Below the pieces are notes generated by a model, which searched no databases, was not told the origin of the DNA, and saw only the letters and a list, made by a program, of their open reading frames with translations. This document shows positions 9,089-34,147 of a stretch of DNA of 64,000 bases, piece by piece; positions within the stretch are counted from its first letter, which is position 1, and each line of letters starts with the position of its first letter. The position numbers and the translations under genes were made by a program. This DNA is from Macrostomum lignano (lineage: Eukaryota): NCBI GenBank assembly GCA_002269645.1, contig NIVC01001450.1, positions 223,257 through 287,256 on the forward strand, in the 5' to 3' direction.

Positions 9089-9361
9089 GATTATAAGCTC
9101 TAAAGGCTATTTATGCAAACTGTAATAGATGTGTAAAATGAACAATTTATAAATAAAAGCACTTATAAAACAGGACTTTCCCTTGCTTTAGGAAGTAAAA
9201 ATGTATCAATGTTCATTGAAACCTTATCAGTTGATAAAATTGAATTTTATTGAAATATATATTAAATCATTTAGAATCAATAAATTATGTATTTTAATGC
9301 TATTTAAATTAATAGTGCTGTTTAATCATTTTATTCCTTATGGATATAACAAAATCCTAGT

Positions 9362-9739
9362 CTAGGTTTTTTGGGCCATACAGGGGTTTTCGGTCCCTTG
9401 AAAATTTCATTGGCAACTGGATTTTTGGTATTCGAGACCAATCTGGCAACTTTATTTCCCCCAATCCAGTTGCCTTTTTAAAAAAAAGGATTTTGTAGGT
9501 GTAATAAAAGTGCCATAAAAATTGGTATAATGGAATTGTTAGTTTGTTATTGTTTGCAGTATAGATAGCAATTTTATAGTTGAGAGAACCAATTTCTGCT
9601 CTTCAAATGTAGCATTGGAAATATCCATCCTTGAGAATTTGGCTAGTTGCCAATGGCAACCAAAAATAGCCATTGGCAATTGAATTTTAAGCCAAAAGGG
9701 CTAGTTGGCAACTGGATTTCCAATCTTAAAAAAACCCAG
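9362..9739. mobile_element. Small non-autonomous DNA transposon, hAT-like
   Basis: 8-bp direct repeat ATCCTAGT at 9354-9361 and 9740-9747. Imperfect 11-bp TIR CTAGGTTTTTT / AAAAAACCCAG. Internal GGCAACTGG motifs occur in both orientations. Confidence 0.55.
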
Positions 9740-10601
9740 ATCCTAGTGCTATGGAAGTCATACTAGATAGTTTGTCAGACAAGTTTGGTCTATTTTCTAT
9801 TTATAATAGCATTAGACTAGGTGCTTAAGACTAGCCTATCTGATTTACATGTGGATGCTAGCAATGGCATCTCACTTAAACCCTGCATGAGTTGGCAATG
9901 TCCAAAGAAATATCTCTGTGCTTAGCCTCAAGATAACCTCTATTTTTATTTTAAAGTTAAAATGCTCAATGATAGCTAGATAGCTTGACAAAAGTGTCAA
10001 AAAGAGCCAACCTCATGCTGAAAATATGTAGAAGACTAAAGTCTTGATTAGATCATGTACCAAGATGCTATTAAGAATAAGACCCTTTTTTCTACAATTG
10101 CATTCTAAACTTATGCATTTCTATATACTTTTATAGATTTATGCTAGAAATTTTCTATAGCATGGGCTAGCTAGGCTGTCTTATACTTAGTGCACTTGCT
10201 AGGGGGCCTATTATGATTTTTTGTGATATAAGGCTCTTAATGATAGGACCAAGGCAGCCACTGCGACTGTTCTACTTTAGTACATTATTTTAAGACTGGC
10301 AGTTTGGGTTGGGCCTAATACCTAAAAATAGCTAGATGTTGCACACTAAAATATCATACCCAGAATTTGGTATGCACTATAGCCTAGGCCTGTCCTATAG
10401 GCAAGATCATGTCAACTATGCGCTAGAACATTTTTTCATTTTTTTCATTTTTCATGCACTACAACTATGCCACTTATGCTATATGTGCCAATGTAATATA
10501 TTAAACTAAAAAAGCTTCTGCATGCCAGAATTCTCTAGGAAAAATAATAGCATCTTGAGTGTGGAGCCTGCCTAAAATGAAATTTTGACCTGCTAGCTAG
10601 T

Positions 10602-12806
10602 TCCACCAGTGAACGAGCCGAGCCCGGCGCCGCTAAAGGCGGCGTCGGGCAAGAGCCAGAGAACCCGAGGCCCCACCAGGGGCCGAGGGCGAGTGAATAA
10701 TTTCTACCCATGGCGGCCGAAGGCCGACATGGGCTAGAAAGTATTTACGAGTAAATAAGTTAGACTCTTATGCATTTTGAAATTTCACGTTTTTTTGCTA
10801 AAAAATGCTCCTGTTTTGCAACCACTGCACCAATTGAGTTGAGTGAGGTGTTGATCGATAGAAAACTTTTAGATCTATCGAATGAATGTACTTTTAAATG
10901 CAGAGATTTTTTAAATGAGCCGTAAATTAACTGGAAAGACGATTTTTTCAAAAGTGCTTCTAGGAGATCTCAAAATTCTGGTACACCTTACCTTACGAGA
11001 TACAGCTTCGACATCTGAGGATCAAAGTTATAAAACTAAATTTCCTACAAAATGGTATATGGCGCTTTGATTTATTTTGGTATCTTTATGTAGTTTTGGT
11101 GGGTTTTTTGGGTAAAAAAATGACCCTCATTTTATTATTTCCCCACTTTTTCCTACGAAGCTTTTTGAGTTTTGGCTTCAAAGCAGTGCATTTGGATGCG
11201 CAATGCAAATATCTACAAGTGTCTAAAGTTTAGTTTTCCTACGCTTCTGCAGTGCTGAGAAAATTGACAAAAATCGATTTTTCAAAAAATCACATGACTT
11301 TCGCATTATTGCTCATTATAATTTTGAGAACATGGTGCGAATAAGCCAATATTGAATTTCTATAGCATAGTTGCTGTACTATATTGGTGTAAATTGCTGC
11401 CGTCTGCTTTCGCTGCTTTCGGATTGAAAAATCGATTAGAAATCGATAATTTGTGATTTTTGGCTGATTGGGTGCCAGAAAAATGGGTGATTAAAATTTT
11501 AAAAGATTTCTAGATCAAATGCGGATACTGCAACGAGTTGTACTAATGTCTGGCTAAAATTTACCAAGTTTTTGAGTGTCTGCAACAAGTGCTCATGTGT
11601 CAAAAGTGATTGGAAATCGATCAGAGTAGTGATTTTTTAATATTTTGCTTGAAATCTGGCAAAAAATGCAATAGGACAGCAATATTTTAATGACGCCTGA
11701 TTTCCCACATAACAGGGCATATTTGTGTGCAATTTCTAGAGATTCGGTTTACTGAGTAAAAAATTATCGATAAAAAACTGAAAACTTGACTTTTTACTTT
11801 TATGTTAGTTCCGGGGCTATTTAAACTGGAAATGGTAGGAATTTCGCATTGAAACCAATGCACAGTGTTCCATATAGTTAATTTAACAAATTTTGTGAAT
11901 TTCATAACCATTCAATGTTTTTTTCATGTAAAAAATGCCTTTTTTGCATCGAAATTCATCACATTAAGCTGCATACCGCTTTGCATAATCTGCATTTGCA
12001 TGTGATTGCTTGCATGGCTTTGGCATTGGGCTGAGTTAAGCTGGTTAGAAAGGAAGGAAAGGAAAGGAAAGGAAGGAATAATTGTACATACAATATACAC
12101 ACCCGTCCCTTCCAAGTGGGGTTGTGGCAACGCGAGAGGGCTTGGCGGCTTGGTTTGGAGGGCGTGTAATAGAGCTTCATTTGACTCGCACACAAACCAA
12201 GGGAAATTAGATCGATAAATGGGCGTCACGTGATTAGAATTTCATATTAAATTTAGCTCTTTAACTGCACATTTGAATTGCAAGCCCAGTACAAAGTTTG
12301 TCGGGCGCAAGATCCAAGTCACTACGTGTACAATCCTCCCCCCGACTAAAAAGTCAGGCGATACGGCTTCTGAAGTAGGTATGTACAGTGTTTTGGAAAG
12401 ACTTTATTTATAGCTTTCTTTGCAAAATATAACCCTGCTACGCTCTGGAGTCATTAGAAATTTTTTTATATCGAGGCCTTCTAAAGCCTATTATAGAAGA
12501 CTCGATTCCAGCTCATGGCTGCGGGTCAGATGAGAGAGAAAGAGAATAGAGAAGAGATAAAACTAAAGAGAAGATAAGAAATAAAACGAGAGCTAGAAGC
12601 GAGAGGAGAGGGGAGACTAGAGAGAGATTAGAGTGGAGAGAAACAGAACAAAGAGAGAAAATGGGAGAAGTAGAGATTTACATTTTTATTGAGCTTCTCA
12701 AAGTTCTTTTTCATCGGTACAAAACTAGGTTTATCAAGTAATATGAAGACCCACGTCTAAAAAGAAGCCCGTTCACTGGTGGCAAAAAGACGTGTGCGTC
12801 TTCATA
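10602..12806. mobile_element. Unclassified ~2.2-kb insertion flanked by a 30-bp direct repeat
   Basis: CTAAAATGAAATTTTGACCTGCTAGCTAGT at 10572-10601 and 12807-12836. Inverted repeat CCACCAGTGAACGAGC (10603-10618) pairs with GCCCGTTCACTGGTGG (12767-12782). Confidence 0.55.
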
Positions 12807-17066: not shown

Positions 17067-20000
17067 ATGAGCATCAGCCTAGAGCATCTACGGCTGCTGT
17101 CGGCCTGCGAAATGGGAGACGTCCAAGAGGCACGTCGGCTACTGCTGGCGGGGGTTTCGCCCGAATGCTGCGAGGCCGACACCAGAGAGACTCCCGTCTA
17201 CGTAGCTGCCAGGTGAGAACATCCCATTCTTATGCATTTCTGGGCTAAACAGAGGAGCAAAAACTGAATCGGAGGTTTGCTCATCATCCGCGCCCAGTCG
17301 TACTGCCCACAGCCGATGCAGGAGGTGCTATTGCTAACGCTGCAGGCACCCTACCGGCGGGGACAGGCACGCACTCGGCGTTTCGTCGACTGCCTGCTAG
17401 CTGACGCCGGCGCCCCGGATTCGGCTGGCGGCGTGGCGTTCATTCGCGGCCTGGCCTTGAAGCGCGCCCTGAGATGCTGACTGCGTATTCTGTTGTTGTT
17501 GTTATGCTTTAACAATAATTCTTTTAACCATCTTTTTCCTTAGAAAAAAGCCTTCGAGAGCTTCAGATAGCTTGAATGTCAAATTTCAAAGTCTAGAAGC
17601 TGGGAGCTATATTCCCATTTAGATTTTTTTGGTTTCGCTCCCAGCTGGTTTCTAATCTGCTGTTCTGTGATAAGATTTAAGATTGCAGTCGGCTTTGGGT
17701 TTTACAGGTGTCCTGCAAGGCTGGCTAAATACTATAGGGCTGGGAAACCAGCGGTTTGCTTATTTCCAACAACACAACAAAATACGCAATCAGATCTTCT
17801 AAAAACAACGTATGCAGCAGAACCTCCTGCATCGTCTGCAGAGAGTACCACGATATCACGCGCAGCGATCGCGTGACATCGCGTGTTGCGTTATTGCTCT
17901 GCCGTTACTCTGATAATTTTTGTAGCCAGGGTCTTTGGATTCTGGAAGAAGATAACAAAAAAGCCAACGTAGCCTTTAAAATAGAGAACTCGCGGCGACC
18001 CGCGAAAGCGTTTCGAGGTCGAATCGATTTTTTAACTGTCTTTAATTTTCATAAGTAGTTGGCGGTATCAGGGTACGAGTAGTTAAGATAAATAAAATTG
18101 GCAAAAAATTCGTTTAAAAAGGATTTTAAAAACATCGATGCAGAGAAGGACACGCAAGAGTCGTCGACCTGCTGGCCCGTTTCGGAGCTGACATCGATCA
18201 CACGGAGGTGGACGGCTTCAGTCCGCTATACATGGCCGCTCAGAACGACCACTGCGCAGCTGCCGAGCGGCTGCTGGCGGCCCAGGCGGACGTGGACCTG
18301 CCGCAGCAAAACGGCGGAACCCCACTGCTCATCGCAACTCAGCAGGGCCACGGCGGCATGGTCCGGCGACTCATTCAGGCCAAAGCCGACGTAAATTGCG
18401 GTAACGTCAATGGCACAACGCCGCTGTACATTGCCTCGCAGTACGGAAACGCAGGCCTCATCCAGCGGCTTTTGGACGCTGGCGCCGCGCCCGATCAGCC
18501 AGAAACCGACGGCACCGCGCCTCTGTGGGTCGCGGCTCAGAACGGACACTTCGAAGCGGTCGAGCGACTTGTGCAGGCCGGCTGCGAGCTGGATCCGCGC
18601 CGCCTCGAGACCCAGTCGACACCGCTGTTCATCGCAGCTGAGAACAACAACCTGGACATTGTGGAGCTGCTGATCACGGCGGGAGCAAACACGGAACTGG
18701 CTGACTATCACAACCAGACGCCGCTGTACACGGCGGCATGGAGTGGCTATTTGTCCGTTGTTGAACGCCTGATCGAAGCTGGAGCCGCTGTCGATGTGGC
18801 GAGATCTGACGACGGCACAACCGCGCTGTTTCGCGCGGCGATTCGAGACCATGCGGCACTCGTTAAACGCCTGGCCGCCGCCGGGGCCAACGTCAACCAC
18901 CCGGCAAGGAACGGTCACACCGTCCTGGTTGCCGTCTCTCTAAAAGGTGACGCAAAGATGGCGGCTCTGCTGCTACAGCTGGGCGCCGACGCAACTGTGG
19001 CGTGCGGAAATGAAAATCCGCCACTGACACCGCTTCGGGCGGCAGTCGAGTTCAATCGAGTGGCCGTGGTTCGAGTGCTGCTAGACGATGCTTCTGCCAA
19101 AGGACGGCGGTTCAACAACTGCGACGAAGCGTTTCGCCGCGACGCTCTGGACTGCACTAGACTGTCTCGGCGGAGAGGCTTGAGGGAGATCGCCAGCCAG
19201 CTGGGAGCGTTCTGGAACACGCGGCCTGTGACTCCGGGGCAGCAACAGAGTCAAAGTTTGACGGTAGAGAGCAGGTGAAAATAGGAGCCTCTGAAATGTT
19301 TATACAACTTTTCCTTTTGGTGTTTCTCATAAAAAAATGAAACAGACATTTAATGGGTTTGATTTGGGTCAGCTAAATGTCATATTTTTGGTCGCATCCA
19401 TACACTAGAGAGCACATTAGGACACTCAGAGAGTAAAAATTTCTTAGAACGCCTTATAACCAACTTTTACCAACTATTTCAGTAACATCACACAGTCAGG
19501 AGCGGCTGAACTCCGAGGACCTCAAAGCCTTCACGAAGCGTTCAACGCTGCCGGTTTCACCAGCGATCGGGCGGCCTTCCAGTGCGCCATGTCGGACGTG
19601 CTCGAGGAGGTGATTCGCGGCCACAGGAACACCAGAGAAGTGAACCTTGTGGGCAGCTACAGCGAGGGCTGGGGCAACAGCCTGGTTTCGCTGAACGGTC
19701 GCACGGACCCAGACTCAGATCTGGACATAACAGAGTTCTCGCACAGGAGACTGTTCCACATTCGGGGCAGGTGTCGCTGCACTGAGCCCCAGGTGGAAGA
19801 TGTCCTGGACTACGACAGGGGCCATGTGCTCTACGAAGGAGCCAGTAAGTTTGTTGTGTTCGGTTTTCGCTGCAAAAATAAAGTCGCACTAAAAAGTTCC
19901 GAAGATATGCAATAAAATTTTGATCGTTACCTGCAGGCTCCAACCCGTCCCTGCCGGACAGAGGCTCCGATCTCAGGCCCGCCATGGACCTGGTGCCAGC

Positions 20001-21378
20001 GTTCGCTTGCTGCTCCTACCCGGATATTGCCGTTCTGCATCAGCAGGACACTTACCTGCCAAAGCTGCTGTTAGCCGAACTGCGAGCGGAGCTGTCGCGG
20101 CCTCGCTCCTGCCACCTGATCCGCGCCTCGGCTCCCGGTTTCGAGGCCAAGCAGATGCGGGTGAGCACGACCTTCTTGGAGAAACGGTTCATGCGCAGTC
20201 TCACCGCAGTCCAGGGACAGCTGTTCCTGACACTCAAGTTCCTCATCAAGCGGGTCATTGGCAAGGAGCTGAATGTACACGGACTCAAGTCCTATCACGC
20301 AAAGACGCTCACGTTCCGCATGGTGACTAGCACGGAGCCAAGACTGTGGCAGCCGGAGAACCTCAGGGAGCTGGTCTGTAGCGCTCTTGAGGATTTGCGC
20401 CACTGCTTGACCACCGCTCCGCCTGGCGAGTGCATGCCGCACTACTTCATGCAGGACGCCCCGCTCTACCTGCGGCGGGGCAGCTCAGCCAAGGCCGAGG
20501 TGATCGCCGCTCTGGACAAGGTGAAGAGCAACTTGGCAATGTACTTGTCCAGTCTGGCGTCACAACTGCAGCCACTGACGGATGCTCAGGCCAGCTTCCG
20601 GCTGCATCCGTTCACCTTGCTACCGATCTACCTGGTGCTGCCTTGGCCAGACGAAGGAGAGCTGCAGTACCACCACCTGTACGCTGTTGTTCGCAAGCTC
20701 GTGCTCGATCTGGGAGCGCCAAAAACTCCGAGGACTCAGGCCGAATTGCAGGAGATGTACCGCCTGGCACAGCGACTGCCTTATTGCGCGCTCACCGCCC
20801 GCACCTGCCTACTCGCGCTGGCGCTGCTCCGAATGTCGCGTCCGTCAGAGGCAGCTCAGCAGCTGCGGCTCAGCCTGGGCTTCGAGAGGCGTCATCAGCG
20901 ACCACTGCTGCGCAGCCTGCCGGTGGGCCTGGCCGCCGGGCAGGACGACGGCGGCCGCGGCAACATCCGCCGCCTGCTGGAGACGACAGACTCGGCATGG
21001 CGGTTCTGCTTCTACTACGAGTCTCTGCCGGGCCCCAGCTTCCACTACCTGCTGCCGAGTCCCAGCGCCTACGCTAGCTTCCCCTGCATCATGGCCAGCT
21101 ACGAGAACTTCTTCTACGTAAACTTCGAGGCTCTGGCCAGATTGCTGATGTGCCAGCTGGCTCCGGACCTGCTGACTACCGCTGAGACGGACAGCTGGTT
21201 CCGGGAGCTGCAGACCGGCGACCCGGACTGGCTGGAGGTGGCCGTGCTCGCCCAGCACAGCCGCCGGCCTGAGCAGCTGAGGTGGGCGCTCAGCTGGCTG
21301 AGCAGTGCGCGGCCGGTGAGCCTCGAGATGCTGCGTGACATTCGACAGAAGATCGATCGGCTGCTGGCACCGGAGTGA
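17067..21378 (+). CDS. Ankyrin-repeat cGAS-like receptor (ANK x~11 + Mab-21/cGLR nucleotidyltransferase + helical C-terminal region), 4 exons, ~1026 aa
   Basis: join(17067-17212, 18144-19274, 19483-19844, 19937-21378) = 3081 nt, with GT-AG introns in phases 2,2,1. Intron 1 restores a perfect ankyrin repeat (TPVYVAAR|EGHARVVDLL). NTase motifs VGSYSEG...SDLDI and DLVPA, and Mab-21 motifs KSYHAKT and PHYF, are present. The ANK and Mab-21 parts are individually secure; the join relies on the donor GTGAAA at 19275. Confidence 0.82.
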
Positions 21379-23456: not shown

Positions 23457-26400
23457 ATGTCCGTTTGGGCCAGCAGTTGGCTTTGCGGAGTGCCTCTGCT
23501 GCTGCTCGGCTGCTTCTGCTGCCTGCGGTGGGCCACCGGCTCTGCCGCAGATCCCGGCGGTTCCGGGTCGGTTGGTGAGTTCGGAGCTTACCATGATTGC
23601 TGGGCTGGTGATGGAAGGTGTGATCTGATCTACTGACTATACTCGTACAGGAGTCACAATGTCCACTTCATGCAAATTTTTGCGTACAAGCTATTGTAGA
23701 TGCTAGAGTGCCATTATCGACGGTATTATCGATGCTAGAGTGCCATTGTTGACGTTATTATCGATGAAAGAGTGCCATTATTGACGTTATTATCGATGAA
23801 AGAGTGCCATTATCGACGTTATTATCGATGCTAGAGTGCTATTATCGATGTTATTATCGATGCAAGAGTGCCATTATCGACGCTATTGTTGATGCAAGAG
23901 TGCCATTATCGACGCTATTGTTGATGCAAGAGTGCCATTATCGATGTTATTTTAGATGCTAGAGTGCCATTATCGACGCTATTGTTGATGCAAGAGTGCC
24001 ATTATCAACGTTATTGTTGATGCAAGAGTGCCATTATCGACGCTACAGAGCTATTATCGACGCCGGAGAGCCATAATACATGTAGATGCTGGAGAGCCAT
24101 TATCGACGCTATTGTTGATGCAAGAGTGCCATTATCGATGTTATTTTAGATGCTAGAGTGCCATTATCGACGCTATTGTTGATGCAAGAGTGCCATTATC
24201 AACGTTATTGTTGATGCAAGAGTGCCATTATCGACGCCGGAGAGCCATAATACATGTAGATGCTGGAGAGCCATTATCGGCGCTAGAGTGTTAATTTAGG
24301 CAGAGAAGGTACCAGGCCAGATGCTAGTAAATTAGCGAAGGTACTTACTTTGAGGTCCGATCCAGGTGCTATGGCGCTATTTCCTAGGAGACAATCTAGG
24401 AGGGAAAGCAAAATGTTTTGCAGACATCTCGATATCTTTGACAATCCCGATGCTCAACAGCCAGCCGCTACTTCACCTCGGCGAGCTCAGCACCGGCTCC
24501 GATATCTTCCCCAATGTCTGTCAGCCCGGCCCGCAGCGACATCGAGTGCGCCGGAATCTGCGCTTCGAAACTCGGCTGTCGGCACTTCCGGTTCGCAGTC
24601 GAGAGCCTGAGCTGCGCCCTTTACGACGCAGGCAGCGGGGGCGCCGGAGGGACTTCCGAAGTGGCGGCTTTTGAAGCCGACGGTGAGAAGCAAATCTCAG
24701 TGCGACACTTATCCAAGGACTACTAAAGTAGAAGGACGCGACACTCGCAATCAATAGAAAATGTTTTGAAGGCCACCTTTCGCCGAAAAATGCACTACGG
24801 AGATAGGAAAGCTTCATTTTTTCAGCACAAAAATATTTATTCCGTTAGATAGAAGGCCGACCCAATGCTCATCATTTAATATGCTCTGCCTTTCTTACAG
24901 CTCTATAATTGATATTACGGCAATAGATCTTTGATATCAATAGAGCTATAAGAAAGGTACAGCATATCAAATTATGAACACTGGGTCTGCCTTCTATCGA
25001 ACGCAATAACAAATGACATTTTCCATAGACTGCGAGTGTCGCGTCCTGTATATACATGCTTTAGTTGTCCTTGCACTTATCACTGGGATCCCAGTTGCTA
25101 CAATAAAGCCAGAGCCACAGCTTTGACAATGCTCAAAGTGCGACCCTAAGTGCTCGTAATTGTGGGACCTTGACTAAAGTTGATGTCAAATCGACACCCT
25201 GGAGTGAAAGCCAAAACGGTAGCTTAAAACGCTTCAACCTTGATAAGATGTCATTTGAGGACTGCTTGAGGTCGAGACTTAGGGCCAAAAGGTACAAGAC
25301 GTTTTGGGCATTCAAATTCCCGATTCTAATCGAGAATGTTGGGGGTCACTGAGAATTCAACCCGCGCGATTACCCCACAGCAACCAACTGCCCCTACATG
25401 GCAACACTCGGCGATCGCAGCTTCTGCACCTTCCAAGAGCGAAACAGCGCCTCTGTGAGCTTCGAGAGAACCTGGACAGAGTACGAGGCCGGCTTTGGAG
25501 ACGGCAGCAACTTCTGGATCGGCGAGTGGCGAAGCTTTTGTCTACTTATGTATCAGTAGTATTGTAGGATTTTGGTAACTTTTATTAAAGCCCTTTGTTG
25601 TCTAGTGGTTAGGAGGGTTATAGCCTAGAGACTAGAGCGTCGGACTCACGAATTCAAGGTCGGGGGTTCGATTCCCGATCCCTCAGGAACAATATGTGTC
25701 CTTAAGCAAGACACTTAACTCTGCATTGCTTCAGTTCACCCAGCTGTGAAATGGGTGCCAGCATTAGCTTGGGTAATTGAAGGTGTGTGTGGCGACCCCC
25801 CAGTCCTTGGACTGAACAGCCGTACGCAGCCTTCAGATGCGAAATAGCTGCGGCTGAGCTGTCGGTTGCACATCTGGCATGATTGGGGCAGGTGTAATCA
25901 ATTATTATTATCAGTAGTAGTATTATTAAGACCTTAGATATTTAGTATATTGTGATAAAGACCCTTGACTTTTATATCCTAAATGTCATTGCCGAAGGCT
26001 CACCCATTCCGTATCAACTTTCCGTATCAAAAATTTGACATTCAGTCGTACCCGTGTCAATCAGGCCTCCAGCGCATTCACGAGCTCACAGCCTCCACGC
26101 CGAGAACCCTCCGGATCCGTTTTCTGCTGTACAACAACTCCGAGTACTTCAACGAGTACAGCAGCTTCACGGTGGGCAATTCGACAACAAAGTACCAGAT
26201 GAACTATGCCGCGTTTCTGTCCAACCAGTCAAACTTGGCGAGCGACTGCCTGGCGGTGCACAATGGAATGAAGTTCTCCACCAAGGACCAGGACAATGAC
26301 GCTGCGCAGGCAGACTTCTGCGCAGTCGCATACGGAAATGCGGGCTTCTGGTTCAACTACTGCCTCACGTGCAACCCGAACGGTTGGTACGCGCCCAGCG

Positions 26401-26492
26401 GAGACGTCTACAGCCCCAAGTACGCCTACTGGAAATGCGTCGAGAATAACTACACTGCGGTTCGCTCCATCAGCATGATGCTGCAAGTCTGA
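23457..26492 (+). CDS. Secreted PAN/apple + fibrinogen C-terminal domain protein (FReD/ficolin-like), 4 exons, ~302 aa
   Basis: join(23457-23574, 24461-24682, 25381-25521, 26065-26492) = 909 nt, all phase 1. Signal-peptide-like start MSVWASSWLCGVPLLLLGCFCCLRWATG. PAN Cys pattern ECAGIC...C...C. FReD motifs FERTWTEYEAGFG, FWIG|LQRIHELT, HNGMKFSTKDQDND and GFWFNYCLTCNPNG. Intron 3 is GC-AG. The exon-2 acceptor is the least certain boundary. Confidence 0.85.
23700..24290. repeat. 32-bp minisatellite in FReD intron 1
   Basis: Unit GATGCAAGAGTGCCATTATCGACGCTATTGTT, about 18 variable copies. Confidence 0.9.
24714..25073. mobile_element. hAT-type MITE (CAAGG family), internally deleted, in FReD intron 2
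   Basis: Ends CAAGGACTACT...AGTTGTCCTTG. Exact 8-bp TSD CACTTATC at 24706-24713 and 25074-25081. Homologous to 13667-14364. Confidence 0.85.
25595..25920 (+). mobile_element. CORE-like SINE family 1 in FReD intron 3
   Basis: Head, CORE-like block TGTGTCCTTAAGCAAGACACTTAACTC, shared 3' body and ATT tail. Confidence 0.75.
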
Positions 26493-26883
26493 AGTCTGCA
26501 AGGCTGAATTCGACAAGTCAGCCAGAGATTGAAGAGATGAAAGAGTACTGCATGGGGATCGAAAATTTTCATGCACACTTGAGAATATTGTTTTGTAGCT
26601 ATTTGTTTAAATCGGTAGGTTTATATATGGAGCTTTATTTAGTTCTGTAGGTGGTCAATTATTGTTTTATTAGCCATGATGCTTCAGGATACACAGAGTT
26701 AAACTTTTTCTGGAATATATTTATTCAAACGAAGGTTTCAATAAATAAATACACAGTTAGAGCACACTTTTTAAAGAGCTGGAGTAGTGGTTAATCATAG
26801 ATGAAAATGTTGAAGTTAAATAAAGCTGACCTGATTTTTGTTTCAATTTAAACTCTTCCAAATCAACTGAGATCAGTTCCAGT

Positions 26884-29800
26884 CTATCCGCGGGAGCTGA
26901 GCTGCATGAGAGCGGCGAAAGCAGCGATGAGCATCCGGGGCCGGGCCTGCGCAATGTCCACCGGGGAGGCGAACACCTTGGCACCGGCTCGCCAGCTTAG
27001 ACTGACAGCCAGGCGGGCGTTCTGCAGCCGCTCCTGCGTTTTATTCGAGGTTGGTTGGCTCAGCCAGGTCATTGGGAGCGTCAGGGCACATGCAGTACGA
27101 ATACCCTCGAATTTGTTATGGGAGACCCATATTTATTTCAGAACGGTATTGAGTGTTTAGTGTTTTCGACGTTAAAATAGCAATTGTCCCTGTTGGGACA
27201 TAAACCTAAACCTAAACCTAAACCTAAACCTAAACTACGTGTCGCTCGCAGGTTTTTCTTTTTTACTTTTTGAAGGAAAATAATGGGTTTAAAGCAAAAA
27301 GCACCCGCCCTGAAATTCTGACATCTAGCCTGAAATATCAGCATCCTCTGAGTTTTGGATCGAAGCATCTCAGCAACCCCCATGAGTCTTGACCTTGAAA
27401 TCTCAACGATTCTCCCCATGAGCAACAGCATTTCGGCGACCCCCCATACATCTCAGCAACTCTCTTTAAGAGCCACAAAATTTCAGCAGTTCTTCAGCCT
27501 CAAGCTTGTTGTTCGAGTCCAAATTTGAAGCTTTATTGCCTGTCTGATCGACGGATTGCTGACAAATGCTGGGAAGTTCGTGATTCTCAAACTCACCGCC
27601 TCGGTGGCCCCCGGCAGCACCAAGCTGTAGTCGACGTAGCCGGGCCTCAGGCAGTCGATGAGGTCCAGCAGGCAGTGGCAGTTGCCCAGGCCGGCGTCCA
27701 GAAACGAGCGCAACCGCGACTTCTTGCCACCGCGCTGCAGCTGCTCGTTCGTCCACTCGACAATCGTGTTCTCGTCAACCAGCCGCTTGGAATTCTCGAC
27801 TCGATTGTCCCCCCTGGAGACTGCGGCCGGGTTGTGCGAGAGCATCAGCTGCCGCAGCAGCGCAAGAGTCGGCATCTCGTCACCGTCCAGGAGGCTCTTG
27901 CCACGGATGCCCACCAAGCTGAAGCCCAGCTGCCTGCCCAGCTCCACAGCGTAGTCGCAGTTCTCCAGCCGCTGAAAGTAGGCTCGGGCCCCGCGAAGTG
28001 TCTGGCTCACGCGCGACCACTGGACCAGGCCCGGCCGGATCTGGTCCAGCAGCTGCAGGTACGGCAGCCCGGAGCTCGCGTCTGTGTACAGGCAGTTGAT
28101 CCTGGGCTGCACCCCGGCCGAGTTCATCCAGTTCGCGTAGGTTCTCTCCTCGCGAACCAGCTCTGGCGGCTTTTCAGCGGCCTGCTCAGCCCCGGCCTGG
28201 CCGCCATCCGGCAGCTCGGGCAGGCAGGGCCACCTTTTGAACAGGTTGGCCACGAACATGACGTTCAGGTTGGAATTTCCGCTGACAATGTCCTCCGGCT
28301 GAAGAAATTCGCGAGCTTCAATGAGATCCGCGTTCTGCAGAACCAGCTGCGCTCTCAGGAGGAGGTCACTTTGAGCGACAATTCCCTGCAAGTTTGCGGC
28401 ATTTTCAAGCTTCATTCAGATGCACTGGGGCAAGTTCCTGCTCACTCCCAAGGATGTATTCTTTGTCCTCAGGCAGTGCAGCATTGGATTTAGCCACACC
28501 AGCCAAAGGCCGGGTTTAGTTTAGGTCAGGTTTAGTTTAGATTGGGTTTAGTTTAGGTCAGGTTTAGTTTTATGAACGGGATGAGAATACAGCCAGAAGG
28601 CAACGCTCGAAAGTGAAAAGTGACTCAAAAAATAAACAGCTGCTTTCTAAAGTGCAAAATTTAGGAAGCAGGGGTACGAGTAGGATTCTGTCTTTTCGGG
28701 TCGAATGTGTGCGATAAGCTAATACTTATTGCGATCAGAACCGAGGTGACTCACCGCAGCAGGATTCAAGCAGTCCCTCATGTCAGGCGGGCAGATCTGC
28801 TGCAGCAGAAGCGCGTAAGCCGCGCTGTCTCTCACATCCTCACTGAAGTTTTCAATCGAACGTTCACTGCCCGCATTACGCAGATGGTAGTTCACCCATC
28901 GCATGAGCATTTGCTCAGGTGCAATGCCTCGAATGTCTGCGTCCTGTTCTGTCTCTGGGAGCATGGCTTTGAGCTTCTGCGAGTCTGCGGCAGCTGCCTG
29001 CTTGACAGCATCAGTCAGGCCGAACCAGATCAGCTGCCACAGGAGATCGAGCAGCAGCTTCGGACTCTGCGCCAATTCAGCCGCCTCGGAGCTAACGGGA
29101 ACTCCGAGGCTTTGAGCCGAGTTCAGCGCCAGGGTAATGTTCTCAATCTGGTGCGACCGATTCATGCCTGCGTCTCTGTGCAACGCTCGCTTGTCGATTG
29201 TGTCCTGTGAGACAGCGTTGACCGCGCTGCTGCAATGGACAGATGTAGTAGTGAAATGTTCTGTCAGTTGCAATGCTTTAGACTACAAGCTGCAAACAAA
29301 GGCTCTAAGTTTTCTTGGAATAAATCCAGGAAACCTTCAAGGATTGTTCTGCTACTTGTATCACAGAATAAATAATTGCATGCAACGGTTAGTGATTTAC
29401 CATAGTAATATGCCATCGTCAAATTTCCCTTCGATTTCCGCCAGGATGTCCTCAATTGGCAAGTACTTCTCACAGTCAGGATCCGACCTCAGGTTTTTGT
29501 TAAGCCAATCAGCCACTGCTGCCTTCTCTCCAGCAGCTGGTTGGTCTGAAACCTCTGCTCCAGGTTCATCCTTCGACTCTGAAGTCTCGTTCTTCGTTTC
29601 CATAGTAGGAGGTTCATCTTCTAACGTTTCGAATCGGACAGCATCCAGTGCCGGCTCGTCTTCTGGTGCTTCCGGTTGCGCCTCTCCCAGTGCCGGCTCG
29701 TCTTCTGGTGCTTCCGGTTGCGCCTCTCCCAGTGGCGGCTCATCTTCCAGCAGCAGTTTTTCTAATTCGTTTTCCAGCTGCAAATCGGCTAATTCCTCAG

Positions 29801-32663
29801 GCCGAGGCGCATCCGGCAGCGGGTCCAGCGCCATCTCTTTTCTTTCGTGGTTCTCCTGCTTTCGCTTGCGCAGTCTTTCATTACCCAGGCGACTCAGGTT
29901 GAGCTTAGCCGCCGATCGAATTTCCTTGTTTCGAATAGTTTGATCCTTCTCCGATTCGAACTTGTAGCTTAGCAGCTCGGCGCACATGTTCTCACTGGGA
30001 CCGCCGAGCAGCTTAACAGACGAGCCTGCCGAGTCTTCGAGTCCCTCGATGGTGCCCTGCCAGATGTTGACATCGTCCCGCTGCATCACGGTGCGCTCGT
30101 TCTTGCCCTCGTTCAGCAAGTAGGCCACTTTGAAGTCCGGATCGCCGATTCGGACACTCACCGACACCGGCTTGTTCAGAGGCAGCAGCTTCTGCGTCGG
30201 ATGCAACAGTAGATTGTCGCTGCTCCACGCGGGCAGGGGCTCCGGGAACTGCTCAGCTCGACCGTCCAGCTGGCCCACGCACCGGATGAAGTAGTTCATG
30301 TAGCGCTGCCACGGGCTTGAGCTGCTCTGTCGGTAAAATAGTTGCAGAACGTAGTGACCAGCGATCTTGAACCGCACGTCCACGATGAAGCCGTCGCTGT
30401 CCCTGGAGATGAAAGTGTAGCCGCTGAGCTCTTCGCTCTCCCCGTTCGAGCAAATGTAAGACAGCTCAGCCCTGATTTCCAGGCGAGCTCTTGAAGCAAA
30501 CTTGAGCTGAAGGCTGGGGTCATTGCAAAGAATGTACGGATCGGGATGGCTCAGCGGCCGCACGAGTTCTTGCACGGCATCGTCAGCAACGTCCAGTCCG
30601 CCCAGGCTGTCCAGGTCCGGCAAGGGAAAGTCGCGACAATCGCGAAATTCAGACGCAGAGTCGAGCAGAAACTGACAGACTGGGATGCCTCTGTCGCGGA
30701 CGACCAAGGCGAATGACCCCGAGTCTGGCGACAGAAACTGGATGCTGGTCTTTGGACCGACTGTCCAGGTCAGCAGGTTCTTTGGCGATATGCTTTCGTC
30801 AGCGGCTCCGTACAGCTGGCACTCCAGCCGGTGCGGGCGCTGATCTGTGGACTCCAACTGAATCAGCCGCTCGCCGTCCTCCACCTTGATCTCGCCGGGC
30901 TCGTCCGTTCTCAGTCGAGTAGCAGCAAGCTGCGCTCCGGCCCCAAAGTGCATCAGATCCGCGCAGCCCACGGGCACCATCTTGGCGGTCCGGTCAGCTC
31001 GGGGGCAGTGAATGACGTAAGAGACGTATTCAACTCCCTTTTGTACAATCTTGTCGGGATAATCGATAGTTCTTAGGGAATAAATTGATAACATGAATTT
31101 CCCGCTGCACGGCGGAACAAACTTGAAGCGCACAGTGTCGTGGCTCATTCTGGTTGTTTTGGACAGGTAGCCGTTGATGCTGGCTTGCTGTTTGATCTCC
31201 GCCCGGGTCCCATCGGTGATGTTGGATTTGTGGATGCTAACAACGGCTTTGTAGTCGTACATCTGGCCGGCAGCCTCCCTTAGGTAAACCTTGACGGTAC
31301 CTGGCTTGCCCAGAATGACATTCAGCGGGTGGCTACTGGGGTTTATGCTGTAGTGGAACATCTCGTCCAGGGCCCCTGAAAAGAACTTCGGCATTCGATG
31401 AAACTCGGCCAGGGTGAGGGGCCTGGCCAGCAGCTGCCACTGGATCAGTTCCTCCACGGGGAAGTGCGTGAGAATGAGGTTCTCCGGATCGGTGAGGAAG
31501 TAGAACTCGTTGCAACCGTAAATCAGCCGTCCCTCCGACTTCCTCGAGTCCTCAACGTTGCCCTGGTTGTCCAGTTTGGAATAGTTGCCAGTGTCGAACT
31601 CGGTGAGGATCTGCGCGCCCCACAGCGGATCGACGAGGCGCCACTCGCCCTCGACGTAGCAAGCGGTCCAGTTGCCGCCAGACCTCCGGGCCTCCATGCC
31701 GCTCTCGAAGCCCGCGCCTTTCTTGTAGCCGAATATCTTTTTGGATGGCACATTGGTCAGCCTGTGCATGTAGTTTTCAGGTAGTATACAGTATTGGTAT
31801 CTCATAGAGTTTTTGCTTTAAGGTAATGCTAGTCTCTTTAACAGACCAGCTCATATCTTATTTGTTATTTTGCTTTTTATCCCAAATTTTAAACACTAAA
31901 CTTGAGTTTTCAAGAATGGCTTTACTGAGTCCTAATTTCAAAGTAAAACTCGCAGAGAAACGCATTTTTAGGATGTGTTTCTGTTCTTGTGCTTTAGATT
32001 GACAATAATTCTAAGTAGGTTTTCAGTCATATGTGCATACCTAAATAGGTTTCCACATGGCCAAGTGGGGATATAAAGAAAAAAATTATATATATTTGAT
32101 AATCAAAGCCAAAAAGTGAGCATAACTTTTTATCTTCATGCTGATAATTAACCTTACCCGATCAACCAATCGAAAATCTCATCACTGTCGTTGGTTTGCC
32201 GCATCCGCCTGACCCGGGTGTAGAACTCAGACTCAACCTCCGCCTCGGCCAGCTCGTCCACCGGCAGGCAGCAGACGAAGCAGAAGGCCGCCCGCACCGA
32301 GTCCAGGCCGCAGCGGCTCCGCTCGAACAGCCGCACGGCGAATTCCGCGTCCGACTCGAGCGGCTCCGGCTGCAGCGACTTCACGAATTCATCCTTCTCG
32401 GCGAACTTGGCCGCGTCGAAGATGTCCGACTTGAGCCGACGCGATGGGAACGGGCCGACATCCGTGGCGTCCGGGTCTTTGGGCTCCTCGCCCAGAGTGC
32501 GCTGCAGGTGGGCGAGCACCGTGGGAGTTGGGTAGAACCCGGACGCGATTTTCTCGGCCAGGATGTCCTCGTCCAGCAGGTAGGAGGCCAAGTCGATTTC
32601 CCCATCTTCCGGCCGGTAGGTGCGGTAATACTCCAGATCTGCGAGACTCGGTGGAAGGGACAT
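26884..32663 (-). CDS. KY/hillarin-type transglutaminase-like protein fused to a fimbrin/plastin four-CH actin-bundling core, 5 exons, ~1426 aa
   Basis: complement(join 32158-32663, 29401-31761, 28755-29229, 27597-28385, 26884-27033) = 4281 nt, with GT-AG introns in phases 2,2,0,0. KY/hillarin motifs GYKKG, WTACYVEGEWRLVDPLWGA and EFYFLTDP...HFP...WQLL are present. Plastin motifs are WLNKNLRSDPDC...DGILL|C, ENITLALNSA, LMRWVNYHL, NVMFVANLF, REERTYANWMNS, ENCDYAVELG and NARLAVS. Confidence 0.88.
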
Positions 32664-33157
32664 TGCAGAATCCCAAACACGTAAGCAGCTCTACAAGTAA
32701 AAATTTCTTCTCTTTGATTTTTTGGAGAGCTCTTGAATGCAGCACTGCTGGCCCGCTATCTAATCTTAATTACGCTAAAAATAAGGCACTAACATTCTCA
32801 CGGATTTACTGCTGCTCTTCTCACCGCCCGTACGAGCGCAGCAGCGCGCAAGTGCACAAAACAACCGCCTTTGACAGGCTGCGATATGAAGATACGAAGC
32901 TTACAGAAGCCTGAAGCGTACGTACGCTTCTGCTGGCTCGTGAATGTACGATTGTACTTTTAATTTAACAAGCCCGCAAGCAAGTGAGAGCGCACAGACT
33001 TTGAGTCTCGTACAAGCGGCAGACAATCGAAATAAAATGGACAAAAGCGGGTATACAGCAAAACCGCAACCCTTAAGGAGGCCGTAATGTCAAGTGGTCT
33101 GGCGCAGTCGCATTAATTTCGAGCCGTCTGCTGATGCAAAATTATAACGGCTTTGGG

Positions 33158-33335: not shown

Positions 33336-33825
33336 CGCTTTAAGTGCGCCAGGGTGTACACAGCCCCTTTGTCTCCCACTAAAAAATCGCAATCCATTCT
33401 TTTATCTGTAAAATTTTAACCGACGTCAAGAATATCCTGGTGCGAGAAACAGAGTTTATTTCATGTTTATTAAGCAAAGAAAGTAGTAAATTTACTAAAG
33501 AAAGCAAACTGCCAAATCTACAAAGCAATTAGCTTTTCACTTCAACTCGGAACTGAAGTGCGCAGGTTTAAGCTGAAACAAGTGGGACAAGATTTGTGCA
33601 TACGTCTTCGTATATTTGTCAGTGAGCAGTACAAGCAATATCAGTGCAGAGCTGAATGGAGCGAAAGATCTATCAGACTTACGAGTACTAAAGCAGTTTA
33701 TAACTGGGAAGACTAAATACATAAATGCAACGGAGACAAAAGTTTGCAGAATTCATCCAACTACATGTCCAAGCAACATTAGATGTAGAAAACTGAAGGT
33801 AAACTTATGAACAAAGCTTAGCGTT

Positions 33826-34120
33826 GAGTAGGTTTCTAATCATCTACCCACCTGTGAGTAGGTTTCCAATCATCTACCCACCTGTGAGTAGGTTTCCAAT
33901 CATCTACCCACCTGTGAGTAGGTTTCCAATCATCTACCCACCTGTGAGTAGGTTTCCAATCATCTACCCACCTGTGAGTAGGTTTCCGATCATTTATCCA
34001 CCTGTGAGTAGGTTTCCGATCATCTACCCACCTGTGAGTAGGTTTCCAATCATCTACCCACCTGTGAGTAGGTTTCCGATCATCTACCCACCTGTGAGTA
34101 GGTTTCCAATCATCTACCCA
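33826..34120. repeat. 30-bp minisatellite just downstream of the GT32 stop codon
   Basis: Unit GAGTAGGTTTCCAATCATCTACCCACCTGT, about 10 near-identical copies. Confidence 0.95.
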
Positions 34121-34147
34121 CTAATCAACTCATCTAATCACCAGGGC

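What the first reader, a model, noticed from the sequence alone, without database searches (positions are those of the whole stretch)
26884..32663. KY/hillarin transglutaminase-like protein fused to a complete fimbrin/plastin actin-bundling core
Seen: one uninterrupted 802-codon ORF (29397-31805) runs from KY/hillarin motifs, through repeated beta-rich domains and an acidic linker, into the start of plastin CH1 (EKAAVADWLNKNLRSDPDC...DGILL). A phase-2 intron then completes DGILL|CSAVNAVSQDTID, and three more exons give CH1-CH4. The fusion junction therefore lies inside an exon. Established: fimbrins normally have an N-terminal EF-hand headpiece, KY is a muscle Z-disc filamin-binding protein, and hillarin is linked to septins/cytokinesis. 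I know of no described protein combining them. Inference: a Ca-independent actin bundler with a scaffold head, possibly for muscle, microvilli or adhesive-organ anchor cells.
Basis: partly seen in the sequence, partly recalled or inferred. Interest (0 to 1): 0.8.

Follow-up and report, generated by a model that had tools for sequence, protein, structure and literature searches.

The report
Flatworm KY-like/plastin fusion gene
A Macrostomum lignano (flatworm) gene really does join a catalytically dead KY/hillarin-type scaffold to a full but divergent plastin actin-binding core lacking its calcium sensor. The combination was found in no other species' proteins and has not been studied experimentally.

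Summary
A 5-exon GT-AG gene on the minus strand (CDS 32663-26884, about 1426 aa) contains one 2361-nt exon. That exon reads without a stop from a KY/hillarin-type head, through a 93-codon acidic linker, into plastin CH1. Three further exons complete CH1-CH4.

The organism is Macrostomum lignano. Three TrEMBL predictions (A0A1I8HW62, A0A1I8III7 and one more) carry the same junction with allelic or paralogous differences, so a mis-join is unlikely.

The plastin half aligns to human PLS3 residues 125-624. It is sister to the worm's own canonical EF-hand plastin and shares three intron positions with it. It keeps only 68% of near-invariant plastin positions.

The KY half has lost the catalytic Cys and His. 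Its homology to a paralogue stops exactly where that paralogue has an exon end. The fusion therefore looks like donor loss plus read-through into a duplicated plastin exon.

No second KY+CH protein appeared in the top 150 of an exhaustive HMMER search of 1.84 billion representatives. No paper describes it.

Loss of Ca2+ regulation is well grounded. Actin bundling, expression as one mRNA and tissue are all untested.

Verdict: a real, lineage-restricted new variant of a known kind, of moderate interest.

The parts
32825..32878 (-). Putative 5'UTR exon. It is preceded by AG and followed by gtgaga, and may be a trans-splice or cis-splice acceptor.
   Evidence: Its translation (PVKGGCFVHLRAAALVRA), joined to 32690-32664 (SCLRVWDSA), reproduces the non-Met N-terminus of UniProt models P0001 and P0002. 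Inference: those models derive from transcripts.
32158..32690 (-). Exon 1: 5'UTR remainder plus CDS from the ATG at 32663. It encodes the N-terminal region and first part of the TGc-like domain (aa 1-168), with donor GG|gtaagg.
   Evidence: It is 38% identical to aa 23-187 of paralogue P0004.
29808..31761 (-). Exon 2, KY-like part: the rest of the inactive TGc-like domain, four Ig-like beta-sandwich domains and a basic helix ending ...ERKEMALDPLPDA.
   Evidence: Ig-like_KY hit. 35% identity to P0004 aa 188-868. Catalytic Cys and His absent. AF2 shows four beta domains plus a helix, with mean pLDDT 60. Foldseek top matches are titin and filamin tandem Ig.
29529..29807 (-). Exon 2, acidic Pro/Glu/Ala-rich linker of 93 codons. 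tblastn detects no homology to either parent over 85 of them (29783-29529).
   Evidence: tblastn limits. GC3 is 0.43, against 0.74-0.84 in most flanking coding segments. Only the coding frame is open.
29645..29747 (-). In-frame 42-nt tandem repeat (2.5 copies, 96% match) encoding GEAQPEAPEDEPAL units within the linker. Another gene copy has one more unit.
   Evidence: Comparison with P0001.
29401..29528 (-). Exon 2, start of plastin CH1 (EKAAVADWLNKNL...DDGILL), ending in a phase-2 donor TG|gtaaat.
   Evidence: The canonical plastin gene has its intron at the same position.
28755..29229 (-). Exon 3: rest of CH1 and first part of CH2.
   Evidence: The intron position is shared with canonical plastin.
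27597..28385 (-). Exon 4: rest of CH2, the ABD1-ABD2 hinge, CH3 and most of CH4. The canonical gene has one extra intron inside this stretch.
26884..27033 (-). Exon 5: end of CH4 (ERLQNARLAVSLSWRAGAKVF...MQLSSRG) and the stop codon.
   Evidence: 59% identical to the last exon of canonical plastin, with the same intron position GxTEA|ERLQNA. CH Pfam tail match.
27466..27558 (-). Alternative 3' terminal coding segment used by the UniProt models. It is reached through a 38-nt intron (27596-27559), gives ...GATEA-QSVDQTGNK...FCGS*, and truncates CH4. Status unresolved.
26720..26725 (-). Candidate AATAAA polyadenylation signal about 160 nt after the stop codon.
   Evidence: Read from the sequence. 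Not tested.

Best explanation
This is a genuine Macrostomum lignano gene encoding one polypeptide of about 1426 aa. Its parts, in order, are:
- a KY/hillarin-type head, made of a catalytically dead transglutaminase-like domain and four Ig-like domains
- a basic helix
- a disordered acidic Pro/Glu/Ala linker of about 90 residues
- a complete plastin ABD1-ABD2 core (CH1-CH4) without the EF-hand/EBM regulatory headpiece.

Origin (inferred). A lineage-specific DNA-level duplicate of the worm's plastin gene came to lie downstream of a member of the expanded KY-like family. The KY-like exon lost its donor site. Reading then continued in frame through new sequence into the plastin exon, just before CH1, which deleted the EF-hand coding part.

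Function (inferred). The plastin core binds F-actin and possibly cross-links it. It does so without Ca2+ control, because the Ca2+ sensor is absent. The KY-like head acts as a non-enzymatic docking scaffold that positions the core or links it to other cytoskeletal partners. Overall this would be a filamin-like layout (actin-binding CH domains plus an Ig rod) built from different parts.

What is shown: gene structure, domain content, loss of EF-hands and of catalytic residues, and parentage. What is inferred: expression as one mRNA, actin binding or bundling, and scaffold partners.
For: - Reading frame: a continuous ORF and five in-frame GT-AG exons.
- Independent copies: the same junction appears in three independently predicted M. 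lignano proteins. They differ from the window by scattered substitutions and one extra in-frame linker repeat. P0001 and P0002 also begin with a translated, spliced 5'UTR, which points to transcript-derived models.
- Plastin half, similarity: E 2e-156, 51% identity and 99% coverage to canonical M. lignano plastin. It is 42% identical to other metazoan plastins. It aligns end to end with PLS3 residues 125-624.
- Plastin half, parentage: it is sister to P0007 in 200 of 200 NJ bootstraps. Three of the canonical gene's intron positions in the core are shared, so this is not a retrocopy.
- EF-hands: absent from the protein and from the whole window.
- KY half, family: Pfam Ig-like_KY hit. Homologous to Hirudo hillarin and to a Branchiostoma protein clustered with one named 'KY'.
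- KY half, enzyme status: the Cys and His of the catalytic triad are replaced.
- Junction: homology to paralogue P0004 ends about 8 codons past the point where P0004 has an exon end (...LEPLPTQ|gtgcat). The fusion has no GT there.
- Linker: its GC3 of 0.43 is intron-like.
- Background from papers: the plastin regulatory domain mediates Ca2+ inhibition of bundling (bioRxiv 10.1101/2021.12.01.470822). KY associates with the CH-domain cross-linker filamin C, and its TGc domain has been proposed to be co-opted for protein-protein interaction (PMC6078408). LTD-1 localises in a pattern reminiscent of actin (PMC3718969).
Against: - I could not reach any RNA read, cDNA or proteomic evidence.
- The NCBI transcript-based annotation of Mlig_3_7 yielded only a truncated 283-aa relative (P0127), not the full fusion.
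- The plastin core is strongly diverged. 63 of 197 near-invariant positions are changed. These include W1292R with neighbouring changes in the last CH3 helix, and many changes in CH1. Two-site actin binding cannot be assumed.
- The UniProt models use a 3' end that truncates CH4.
- M. lignano trans-splices 39% of its genes and makes polycistronic precursors (PMC5730564). An internal plastin-only mRNA is therefore conceivable.
- No orthologue from another species was found that would show long-term conservation.
Confidence: 0.7

Rival explanations
1. The fused ORF exists, but the locus also, or mainly, produces a separate head-less plastin-core mRNA. This would arise from an internal promoter or a spliced-leader acceptor inside exon 2, starting at the in-frame ATG of ...PPTMETKNETSE... 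at about 29602. The KY-plastin protein would then be a minor product.
For: M. lignano trans-splices 38.8% of its genes, and about 7% of assembled transcripts are multi-gene precursors (PMC5730564). An in-frame ATG with A at -3 and G at +4 lies 24 codons upstream of CH1, with an AG about 20 nt before it.
Against: There is no in-frame stop for an upstream KY-only product anywhere in exon 2. All three database models read through the junction. The linker frame is kept open, and its repeat number varies in multiples of 42 nt.
Confidence: 0.12
2. The gene is a young chimeric duplicate whose plastin half is decaying or has been repurposed. It may be transcribed, but it no longer binds or bundles actin, so the 'actin bundler with a scaffold head' reading would be wrong.
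For: Only 68% of near-invariant plastin positions are kept, against 89% in the canonical paralogue and about 99% in other animals. The conserved Trp in the last CH3 helix is lost. The branch is much longer, with mean distance 1.10 against 0.73. No orthologue was found outside M. lignano. A truncated, frame-shifted partial copy exists at another locus. The eLife 2016 tables list two further CH-domain transcripts whose best human hits are plastins.
Against: All 513 core codons are intact across four exons with correct splice sites, in at least three or four gene copies. Retention of invariant positions (68%) is well above overall identity (42%). The four copies differ at only 4 core positions outside the alternative C-terminus.
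Confidence: 0.2
3. The junction is an assembly or annotation artefact: two neighbouring genes joined at the tandem repeat in the linker.
For: A 42-nt tandem repeat sits in the linker. The M. lignano genome is highly duplicated and repeat-rich (PMC5730564). One UniProt copy has a frame-shifted repeat unit.
Against: Both flanks of the repeat lie inside one ORF with unique sequence on each side. The identical flanks occur in three database proteins that differ from the window elsewhere. The window contains neither an EF-hand exon for a stand-alone plastin nor the C-terminal exons of a stand-alone KY-like gene. Neither putative parent gene would have a start or a stop at the junction.
Confidence: 0.03

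Closest known systems
Plastin/fimbrin (human PLS3, PDB 7R94; M. lignano canonical plastin BOX15_Mlig009179g2 = P0007)
   Same: Four CH domains in the plastin order. They are collinear with PLS3 residues 125-624 (E 7e-101). The core is 51% identical to the worm's own plastin, and three intron positions are shared.
   Different: There are no EF-hands, no EF-hand-binding motif and no native linker. A KY-like head and acidic linker of about 910 residues replace them. About one third of near-invariant core positions are changed.
KY (kyphoscoliosis peptidase), hillarin and LTD-1 family: transglutaminase-like domain plus KY Ig-like domains
   Same: Pfam Ig-like_KY domains. The TGc-homologous region aligns with hillarin, KY-like and bacterial TGc proteins. 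Like much of the invertebrate family, it lacks the catalytic Cys.
   Different: No LIM domain, unlike hillarin and LTD-1. Pfam Transglut_core is not detected, and the catalytic His is also lost. The C-terminus is a plastin core. In the closest paralogue P0004 the C-terminus is a coiled-coil tail instead.
UniProt A0A1I8HW62, A0A1I8III7 and a third M. lignano entry (P0001-P0003)
   Same: The same gene family, as allelic or duplicated copies, with the same junction. About 97-99% identical to the window outside the stretches where the gene predictions diverge.
   Different: These are automatic, unreviewed predictions named only 'TGc domain-containing' or 'CH domain-containing'. They contain internal mis-predictions and an alternative 3' end that truncates CH4. 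One copy has an extra linker repeat.
Filamin (CH-CH actin-binding domain plus Ig-repeat rod)
   Same: The overall logic of CH-type actin binding combined with a tandem Ig-like array. The AF2 model's best structural matches include filamin A Ig3-5 and titin Ig tandems. KY binds filamin C in vertebrates.
   Different: The order is reversed, with the Ig array N-terminal. There are two ABDs in one chain instead of dimerisation. The Ig-like domains are KY-type and are not homologous in sequence to filamin repeats.
Other plastin cores with non-EF-hand heads (Choanoeca flexa FG-GAP+4CH; Muranothrix gubernata FERM_f0+PH+8CH, both Trinity ORFs)
   Same: They show that the plastin core has been joined to other N-terminal modules elsewhere in eukaryotes.
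   Different: The heads are different and the lineages unrelated. None has KY-type domains.

Membership tests
Plastin/fimbrin | Four tandem CH domains forming ABD1 and ABD2, collinear with the plastin core | tested here: met
   Pfam CH with 4 stretches, E 2.4e-61. 99% coverage of 513 aa against 2874 plastin hits. Aligns to PLS3 residues 125-624.
Plastin/fimbrin | N-terminal regulatory headpiece: two EF-hands plus an EF-hand-binding motif | tested here: not met
   No EF-hand family scored at E<=1. tblastn with P0007 aa 1-118 finds nothing in the window. Homology starts at PLS3 residue 125.
Plastin/fimbrin | Descent from a plastin gene (phylogeny and gene structure) | tested here: met
   Sister to canonical M. 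lignano plastin in 200/200 NJ bootstraps. Three shared intron positions. Caveat: no other flatworm plastin was in the sample.
Plastin/fimbrin | Conservation of near-invariant core residues | tested here: inconclusive
   134 of 197 positions kept (68%): CH1 64%, CH2 80%, CH3 77%, CH4 70%. The canonical paralogue keeps 89%.
Plastin/fimbrin | F-actin binding through both ABDs, and bundling | not testable with these tools
   Needs co-sedimentation or microscopy.
KY/hillarin (TGc + KY Ig-like) | KY-type Ig-like domains (PF23265) above the gathering score | tested here: met
   62-65 bits against a cut-off of 27, in 2 stretches. AF2 shows four beta-sandwich domains.
KY/hillarin (TGc + KY Ig-like) | Transglutaminase-like core domain | tested here: inconclusive
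   Pfam PF01841 is not reported even at E<=1. The region nevertheless aligns by phmmer with proteins that do carry PF01841 upstream of Ig-like_KY, including hillarin and bacterial TGc proteins. UniProt names the copies 'TGc domain-containing'.
KY/hillarin (TGc + KY Ig-like) | Catalytic Cys-His-Asp triad | tested here: not met
   In the alignment with triad-bearing members (P0263, P0233), the Cys position falls in TNDSDEIF, the His position is Asn (GGNWTAC), and only the Asp (LVDPLWG) is kept.
Hillarin/LTD-1 subfamily | N-terminal LIM domain | tested here: not met
   No LIM hit. A separate M. lignano transcript, RNA1509_4625, has a LIM domain and matches Drosophila Hil at 1e-114 (eLife 2016 supplement).
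KY (vertebrate) | Binding to filamin C and Z-disc localisation | not testable with these tools
   Known from the literature only (PMC6078408).

The most novel reading that the evidence does not exclude
The fusion may act as a 'Rosetta stone': the conserved role of the enigmatic KY/hillarin pseudo-transglutaminase family would be to dock onto CH-domain actin cross-linkers (filamin C in vertebrate muscle). In Macrostomum the partnership would have been hard-wired in cis. The product would be a Ca2+-blind, filamin- or titin-like elastic cross-linker (Ig array, Pro/Glu-rich spring, two ABDs), used in a flatworm-specific actin-rich structure.
Probability: 0.15. Interest if true: 0.65.

Novelty: new variant of a known kind. 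Interest (0 to 1): 0.45.

Why it matters
- Plastin regulation: plastins are defined by an EF-hand headpiece that makes bundling Ca2+-sensitive. A natural plastin core whose headpiece is replaced by a large scaffold shows how cross-linker regulation can be rewired.
- KY/hillarin function: the molecular role of this family is still unclear, although KY loss causes human myopathy. A covalent KY-like/actin-cross-linker fusion is independent genomic support for a functional link between the family and CH-domain actin cross-linkers. It also suggests concrete experiments.
- Gene birth: the junction appears to show donor loss, about 90 new codons with intron-like codon composition, and an expanding in-frame repeat.
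- Limits: the fusion was found in one species and is untested at the RNA and protein levels.

Tried and rejected
1. My first acceptor for exon 2 (31800...tatgag|A) was dropped in favour of 31761. The latter has a better polypyrimidine tract, matches the UniProt models and matches the intron of paralogue P0004.
2. An acceptor at 28424 for exon 4 gives an in-frame stop and was rejected.
3. The spliced protein could not be submitted to the representative search, structure prediction or contig look-up; these accept only exact window or database sequences. I used P0003 and single-exon translations instead.
4. The third word-indexed search, with a KY-family profile, returned only 7 hits and added nothing. 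In the CH-half search the fusion copies themselves were oddly missing from the list. That tool is therefore not evidence of absence.
5. P0127 / locus L002 looked like a second genomic copy. It is only a truncated, frame-shifted fragment (exon 1 plus about 440 nt of exon 2).
6. Multi-stretch long hits with CH at positions 600-950 (P0129, P0140, P0155, P0185, P0265, P0267) were checked as possible KY+CH fusions. None has KY domains.
7. UniProt names 'BAG domain' and 'MT domain' on short members of a KY-like paralogue cluster were not reproduced by Pfam.
8. The PDB sequence search with the KY half found nothing.
9. Supplement searches of four M. lignano papers gave no expression record for this gene. 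The stored files were truncated.
10. The AF2 model has only moderate confidence (mean pLDDT 60, and under 50 in the partial TGc part). I use it only for the count of beta domains.

Full report
**Observation**

The window carries, on the minus strand, an 802-codon ORF at 29397-31805. It is the longest ORF in the 64 kb. Pfam places KY-like Ig domains (PF23265, 65 bits against a cut-off of 27) inside it. It places CH domains (PF00307) in each of the three ORF fragments downstream on the same strand.

Reading the sequence and splicing it in silico gives a five-exon, all GT-AG model:
- Exon 1: 32663-32158
- Exon 2: 31761-29401
- Exon 3: 29229-28755
- Exon 4: 28385-27597
- Exon 5: 27033-26884

The model is 4281 nt and 1426 aa, and is in frame throughout.

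Exon 2 ends ...DDGILL + TG|gtaaat. Exon 3 begins after ...ccattgcag with C, which completes a Cys codon and continues SAVNAVSQDTID.

The spliced protein scores four CH stretches (E 2.4e-61) and two Ig-like_KY stretches. It has no EF-hand, LIM or Transglut_core hit even at E<=1.

**Organism and independent copies**

A search with the spliced protein returned three Macrostomum lignano UniProt entries: A0A1I8HW62 (1450 aa), A0A1I8III7 and a 996-aa entry. All three have the same precomputed PF23265+PF00307 content.

Aligned to the window protein, the junction and linker are identical in P0001 and P0002, and in P0003 as far as that model's mis-predicted stretch just before CH1. The proteins differ elsewhere by scattered substitutions; A0A1I8HW62, for example, has 16 in residues 1-300 and 12 in residues 301-820. 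A0A1I8HW62 also has one extra 14-aa linker unit. These are therefore different alleles or duplicated copies, as expected for this duplicated genome (PMC5730564). A contig-specific mis-join is very unlikely.

Two of the models start with PVKGGCFVHLRAAALVRASCLRVWDSA before the Met. In the window this is the translation of an upstream exon (32878-32825, preceded by AG) spliced to 32690. A spliced, translated 5'UTR is what a transcript-derived ORF call produces. I take this as indirect evidence for a fused mRNA, but it is an inference.

Those models also use the exon-2 acceptor at 31761, which I adopted. They use a different 3' end, reached through a 38-nt intron, which truncates CH4. My last exon has the same intron position as the canonical plastin gene and 59% identity to its last exon. 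Which ending is used needs RNA data.

**The plastin half**

The C-terminal 513 aa hit 2874 plastins. The best hit is M. lignano's own canonical plastin BOX15_Mlig009179g2 (P0007): E 2e-156, 51% identity, 99% coverage, with EF-hand Pfam domains. Other animals' plastins are about 42% identical.

Against solved structures, the half aligns end to end with human plastin-3 residues 125-624 (7R94, E 7e-101). This is exactly the ABD1-ABD2 core without the regulatory domain.

Mapping P0007 onto its locus shows that the fusion shares three of the intron positions in the canonical gene's core: DDGI(I/L)L|C in phase 2, the CH2 position, and GxTEA|ERLQNA. It lacks one. The core therefore came from a DNA-level duplicate, not a retrocopy.

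In the canonical gene the EF-hands and the start of CH1 lie in one exon, so the break fell inside that exon. tblastn with the EF-hand part finds nothing anywhere in the window.

In a neighbour-joining analysis of 27 plastin cores, the fusion core and P0007 are sisters in 200 of 200 bootstraps. The fusion branch is much longer, with mean distance to other plastins of 1.10 against 0.73. No other flatworm was sampled, and long-branch effects cannot be excluded.

Of 197 alignment columns at least 95% conserved in 119 other plastins, the fusion keeps 134 (68%). By domain this is CH1 64%, CH2 80%, CH3 77% and CH4 70%. P0007 keeps 89% and typical plastins 99%.

Changes include W1292R, with neighbouring substitutions, in the last helix of CH3, and a cluster in CH1. 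From general knowledge of CH-type actin-binding domains, the last helices of the first CH domain of an ABD contribute to the main actin contact. Actin binding by ABD2 may therefore be altered. That is an inference.

**The KY/hillarin half**

An exhaustive HMMER search was run against 1.84 billion representatives, using the 996-aa UniProt copy as query because the tool would not accept the spliced sequence. It found 1791 hits.

Named hits include Hirudo medicinalis hillarin (Q964C7, E 1e-25), a Branchiostoma protein whose cluster includes one named 'KY', and mollusc 'transglutaminase-like' or 'KY-like Ig domain' proteins. Pfam gives these relatives, and two bacterial relatives, the Transglut_core + Ig-like_KY architecture.

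In an alignment of 72 TGc regions, the two bacterial-type members keep the Cys-His-Asp triad (…AVCDGYS…, …NHAWNAV…, …LLDSTWG). The fusion has TNDSDEIF at the Cys position, Asn for His (GGNWTAC), and keeps only the Asp (LVDPLWG). Almost all of the other 69 proteins aligned, mostly invertebrate, also lack the Cys.

The domain is therefore a pseudo-enzyme. This fits the published view that KY-family TGc domains may serve protein-protein interaction (PMC6078408).

An AF2 model of the exon-2 KY part has only moderate confidence (shallow alignment, mean pLDDT 60, partial TGc part below 50). It shows four beta-sandwich domains followed by a 39-residue helix. Its best PDB matches are titin and filamin tandem Ig arrays. 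I use it only to support 'repeated Ig-like domains'.

The worm has many KY-like paralogues (P0004, P0005, P0128, P0132, P0133, P0136). Its true LIM-containing hillarin orthologue is a different transcript (eLife 2016 supplement).

**How the fusion arose (inferred)**

The closest paralogue with genomic DNA is P0004 (35% identity, 1386 aa, with a coiled-coil tail). It shares the intron at LLG|C. It has an exon end exactly after ...EEGLEPLPTQ|gtgcat. Its homology to the window stops about 8 codons beyond the corresponding point, at 29784. The fusion reads ...LDPLPDA-PRPEEL with no GT there.

Plastin homology begins at 29528. Between the two lie 85 codons with no detectable homology to either parent, inside a 93-codon linker. 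The linker has these features:
- It is extremely rich in Glu, Pro and Ala.
- It contains a 42-nt in-frame tandem repeat (2.5 copies here, one more in another copy).
- Its GC3 is 0.43, against 0.74-0.84 in most flanking coding segments and 0.32-0.44 overall GC in the introns.
- It is open only in the coding frame.

The simplest reading is loss of the KY-like exon's donor, followed by read-through of formerly non-coding sequence into a truncated plastin exon.

**Is the architecture found elsewhere?**

I ran phmmer with each half against all 273 proteins fetched by then: the top 150 of the exhaustive search, 120 plastins, and the proteins returned by the full-length search. Only the three M. lignano copies hit both halves.

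Long multi-stretch candidates turned out to be tandem plastins or plastin cores with other heads. These include FERM_f0+PH in the ciliate Muranothrix and FG-GAP in the choanoflagellate Choanoeca flexa, both from Trinity ORFs. Replacement of the plastin head has therefore happened elsewhere, but I found no KY-type head outside this species.

There are limits to this. Only the best 150 of 1791 hits are listed, and the query contained only about 1.5 CH domains. The word-indexed searches were clearly insensitive.

Full-text searches found no paper on a KY/hillarin-plastin protein, or on either family in Macrostomum.

**Function**

What follows from the sequence is that the Ca2+-sensing regulatory domain is absent. 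In plastins that domain mediates Ca2+ inhibition of bundling, and ABD1 allosterically restrains ABD2 (bioRxiv 10.1101/2021.12.01.470822). If the core still binds actin, it should do so without direct Ca2+ control.

The literature links the KY family to actin-associated structures:
- KY associates with filamin C at the Z-disc.
- LTD-1 localises in an actin-like pattern.
- Hillarin localises to the cleavage furrow and interacts with septins.

A dead-enzyme scaffold tethering an actin-binding core is therefore coherent, and resembles a filamin-type layout built from other parts.

Against a simple 'bundler' reading stand the strong divergence of all four CH domains and the unresolved 3' end. Tissue of expression is unknown. 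Supplement searches of four M. lignano papers gave nothing for this gene.

**Rivals**

- Internal plastin-only mRNA. In this trans-splicing organism such an mRNA could start at the in-frame ATG at about 29602. It could coexist with the fusion, but a separate KY-only product has no stop codon.
- Decaying or repurposed plastin half. This is compatible with the divergence. However, the core is intact in all copies and keeps invariant positions far above background.
- Assembly artefact. This is disfavoured by the independent copies, and by the absence of the missing halves of either parent gene in the window.

**Verdict**

The functional interpretation is plausible but untested. The finding is a lineage-restricted new variant of known families, already present as unreviewed predictions but not described. 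I rate it of moderate interest (0.45), mainly as a possible 'Rosetta stone' link between KY/hillarin proteins and CH-domain actin cross-linkers, and as a clean example of exon-level gene fusion.

Noticed in passing
window 25983-26492 (+): An exon encoding a fibrinogen C-terminal globular domain (Pfam Fibrinogen_C, E 6e-24). It is convergent with the 3' end of the fusion gene and lies only about 400 nt from its stop codon.
   Followed up: partly
window 33825-34121; 34686-35180; 35199-36112: Three large minisatellite arrays lie upstream of the fusion gene: 30 bp x 9.9, 21 bp x 23.6 and 33 bp x 27. They create long spurious ORFs on both strands.
   Followed up: no
window 27201-27235 and 28513-28570 (introns 4 and 3 of the fusion gene): Short TAAACC/GGTTTA-type tandem repeats, reminiscent of telomere-like hexamers, sit inside two introns.
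   Followed up: no
window 36019-36672 (-); 39810-40454 (+); 18208-19278 (+); 19984-21378 (+); 48947-49528 (-): Neighbouring coding exons: a DXD glycosyltransferase (Gly_transf_sug), ephrin-receptor-like Cys-rich repeats, an ankyrin-repeat protein, a Mab-21-like protein and a WSC-domain protein.
   Followed up: partly
L002 (NIVC01002974.1) 9154-11350: A second M. lignano locus holds a truncated, frame-shifted copy of exon 1 plus the first 440 nt or so of exon 2 (87-95% identical). It is annotated as the 283-aa protein BOX15_Mlig009057g5. Homology stops abruptly after that.
   Followed up: partly
P0001 (A0A1I8HW62) linker, corresponding to window 29645-29747: This copy has an extra repeat unit whose first unit reads ERRNRKHQKH. 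That is the +1 frame of GEAQPEAPE, and the reading then returns to frame. It is either paired indels or sequencing errors in the older assembly.
   Followed up: no
M. lignano transcripts RNA1509_3867 and RNA1509_20952 (eLife 2016 supplement): The eLife 2016 tables list two further CH-domain transcripts whose best human hits are plastins (LCP1 e=3e-32, PLS1 e=2e-26). One of them is testis-expressed. If they are plastin paralogues, the family has expanded in this worm beyond the canonical gene and the fusion.
   Followed up: no
P0278 and P0277 (members of the cluster of KY-like paralogue P0132): UniProt names short fragments of a KY-like paralogue cluster 'BAG domain-containing' and 'MT domain-containing'. 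This is intriguing given the KY-BAG3 link in vertebrates, but Pfam did not reproduce either domain.
   Followed up: partly
Homologous-protein output: The CH-half query did not list the near-identical fusion copies P0001-P0003 among its best 120, although they match at about 99%. The word-indexed search can miss obvious relatives.
   Followed up: no
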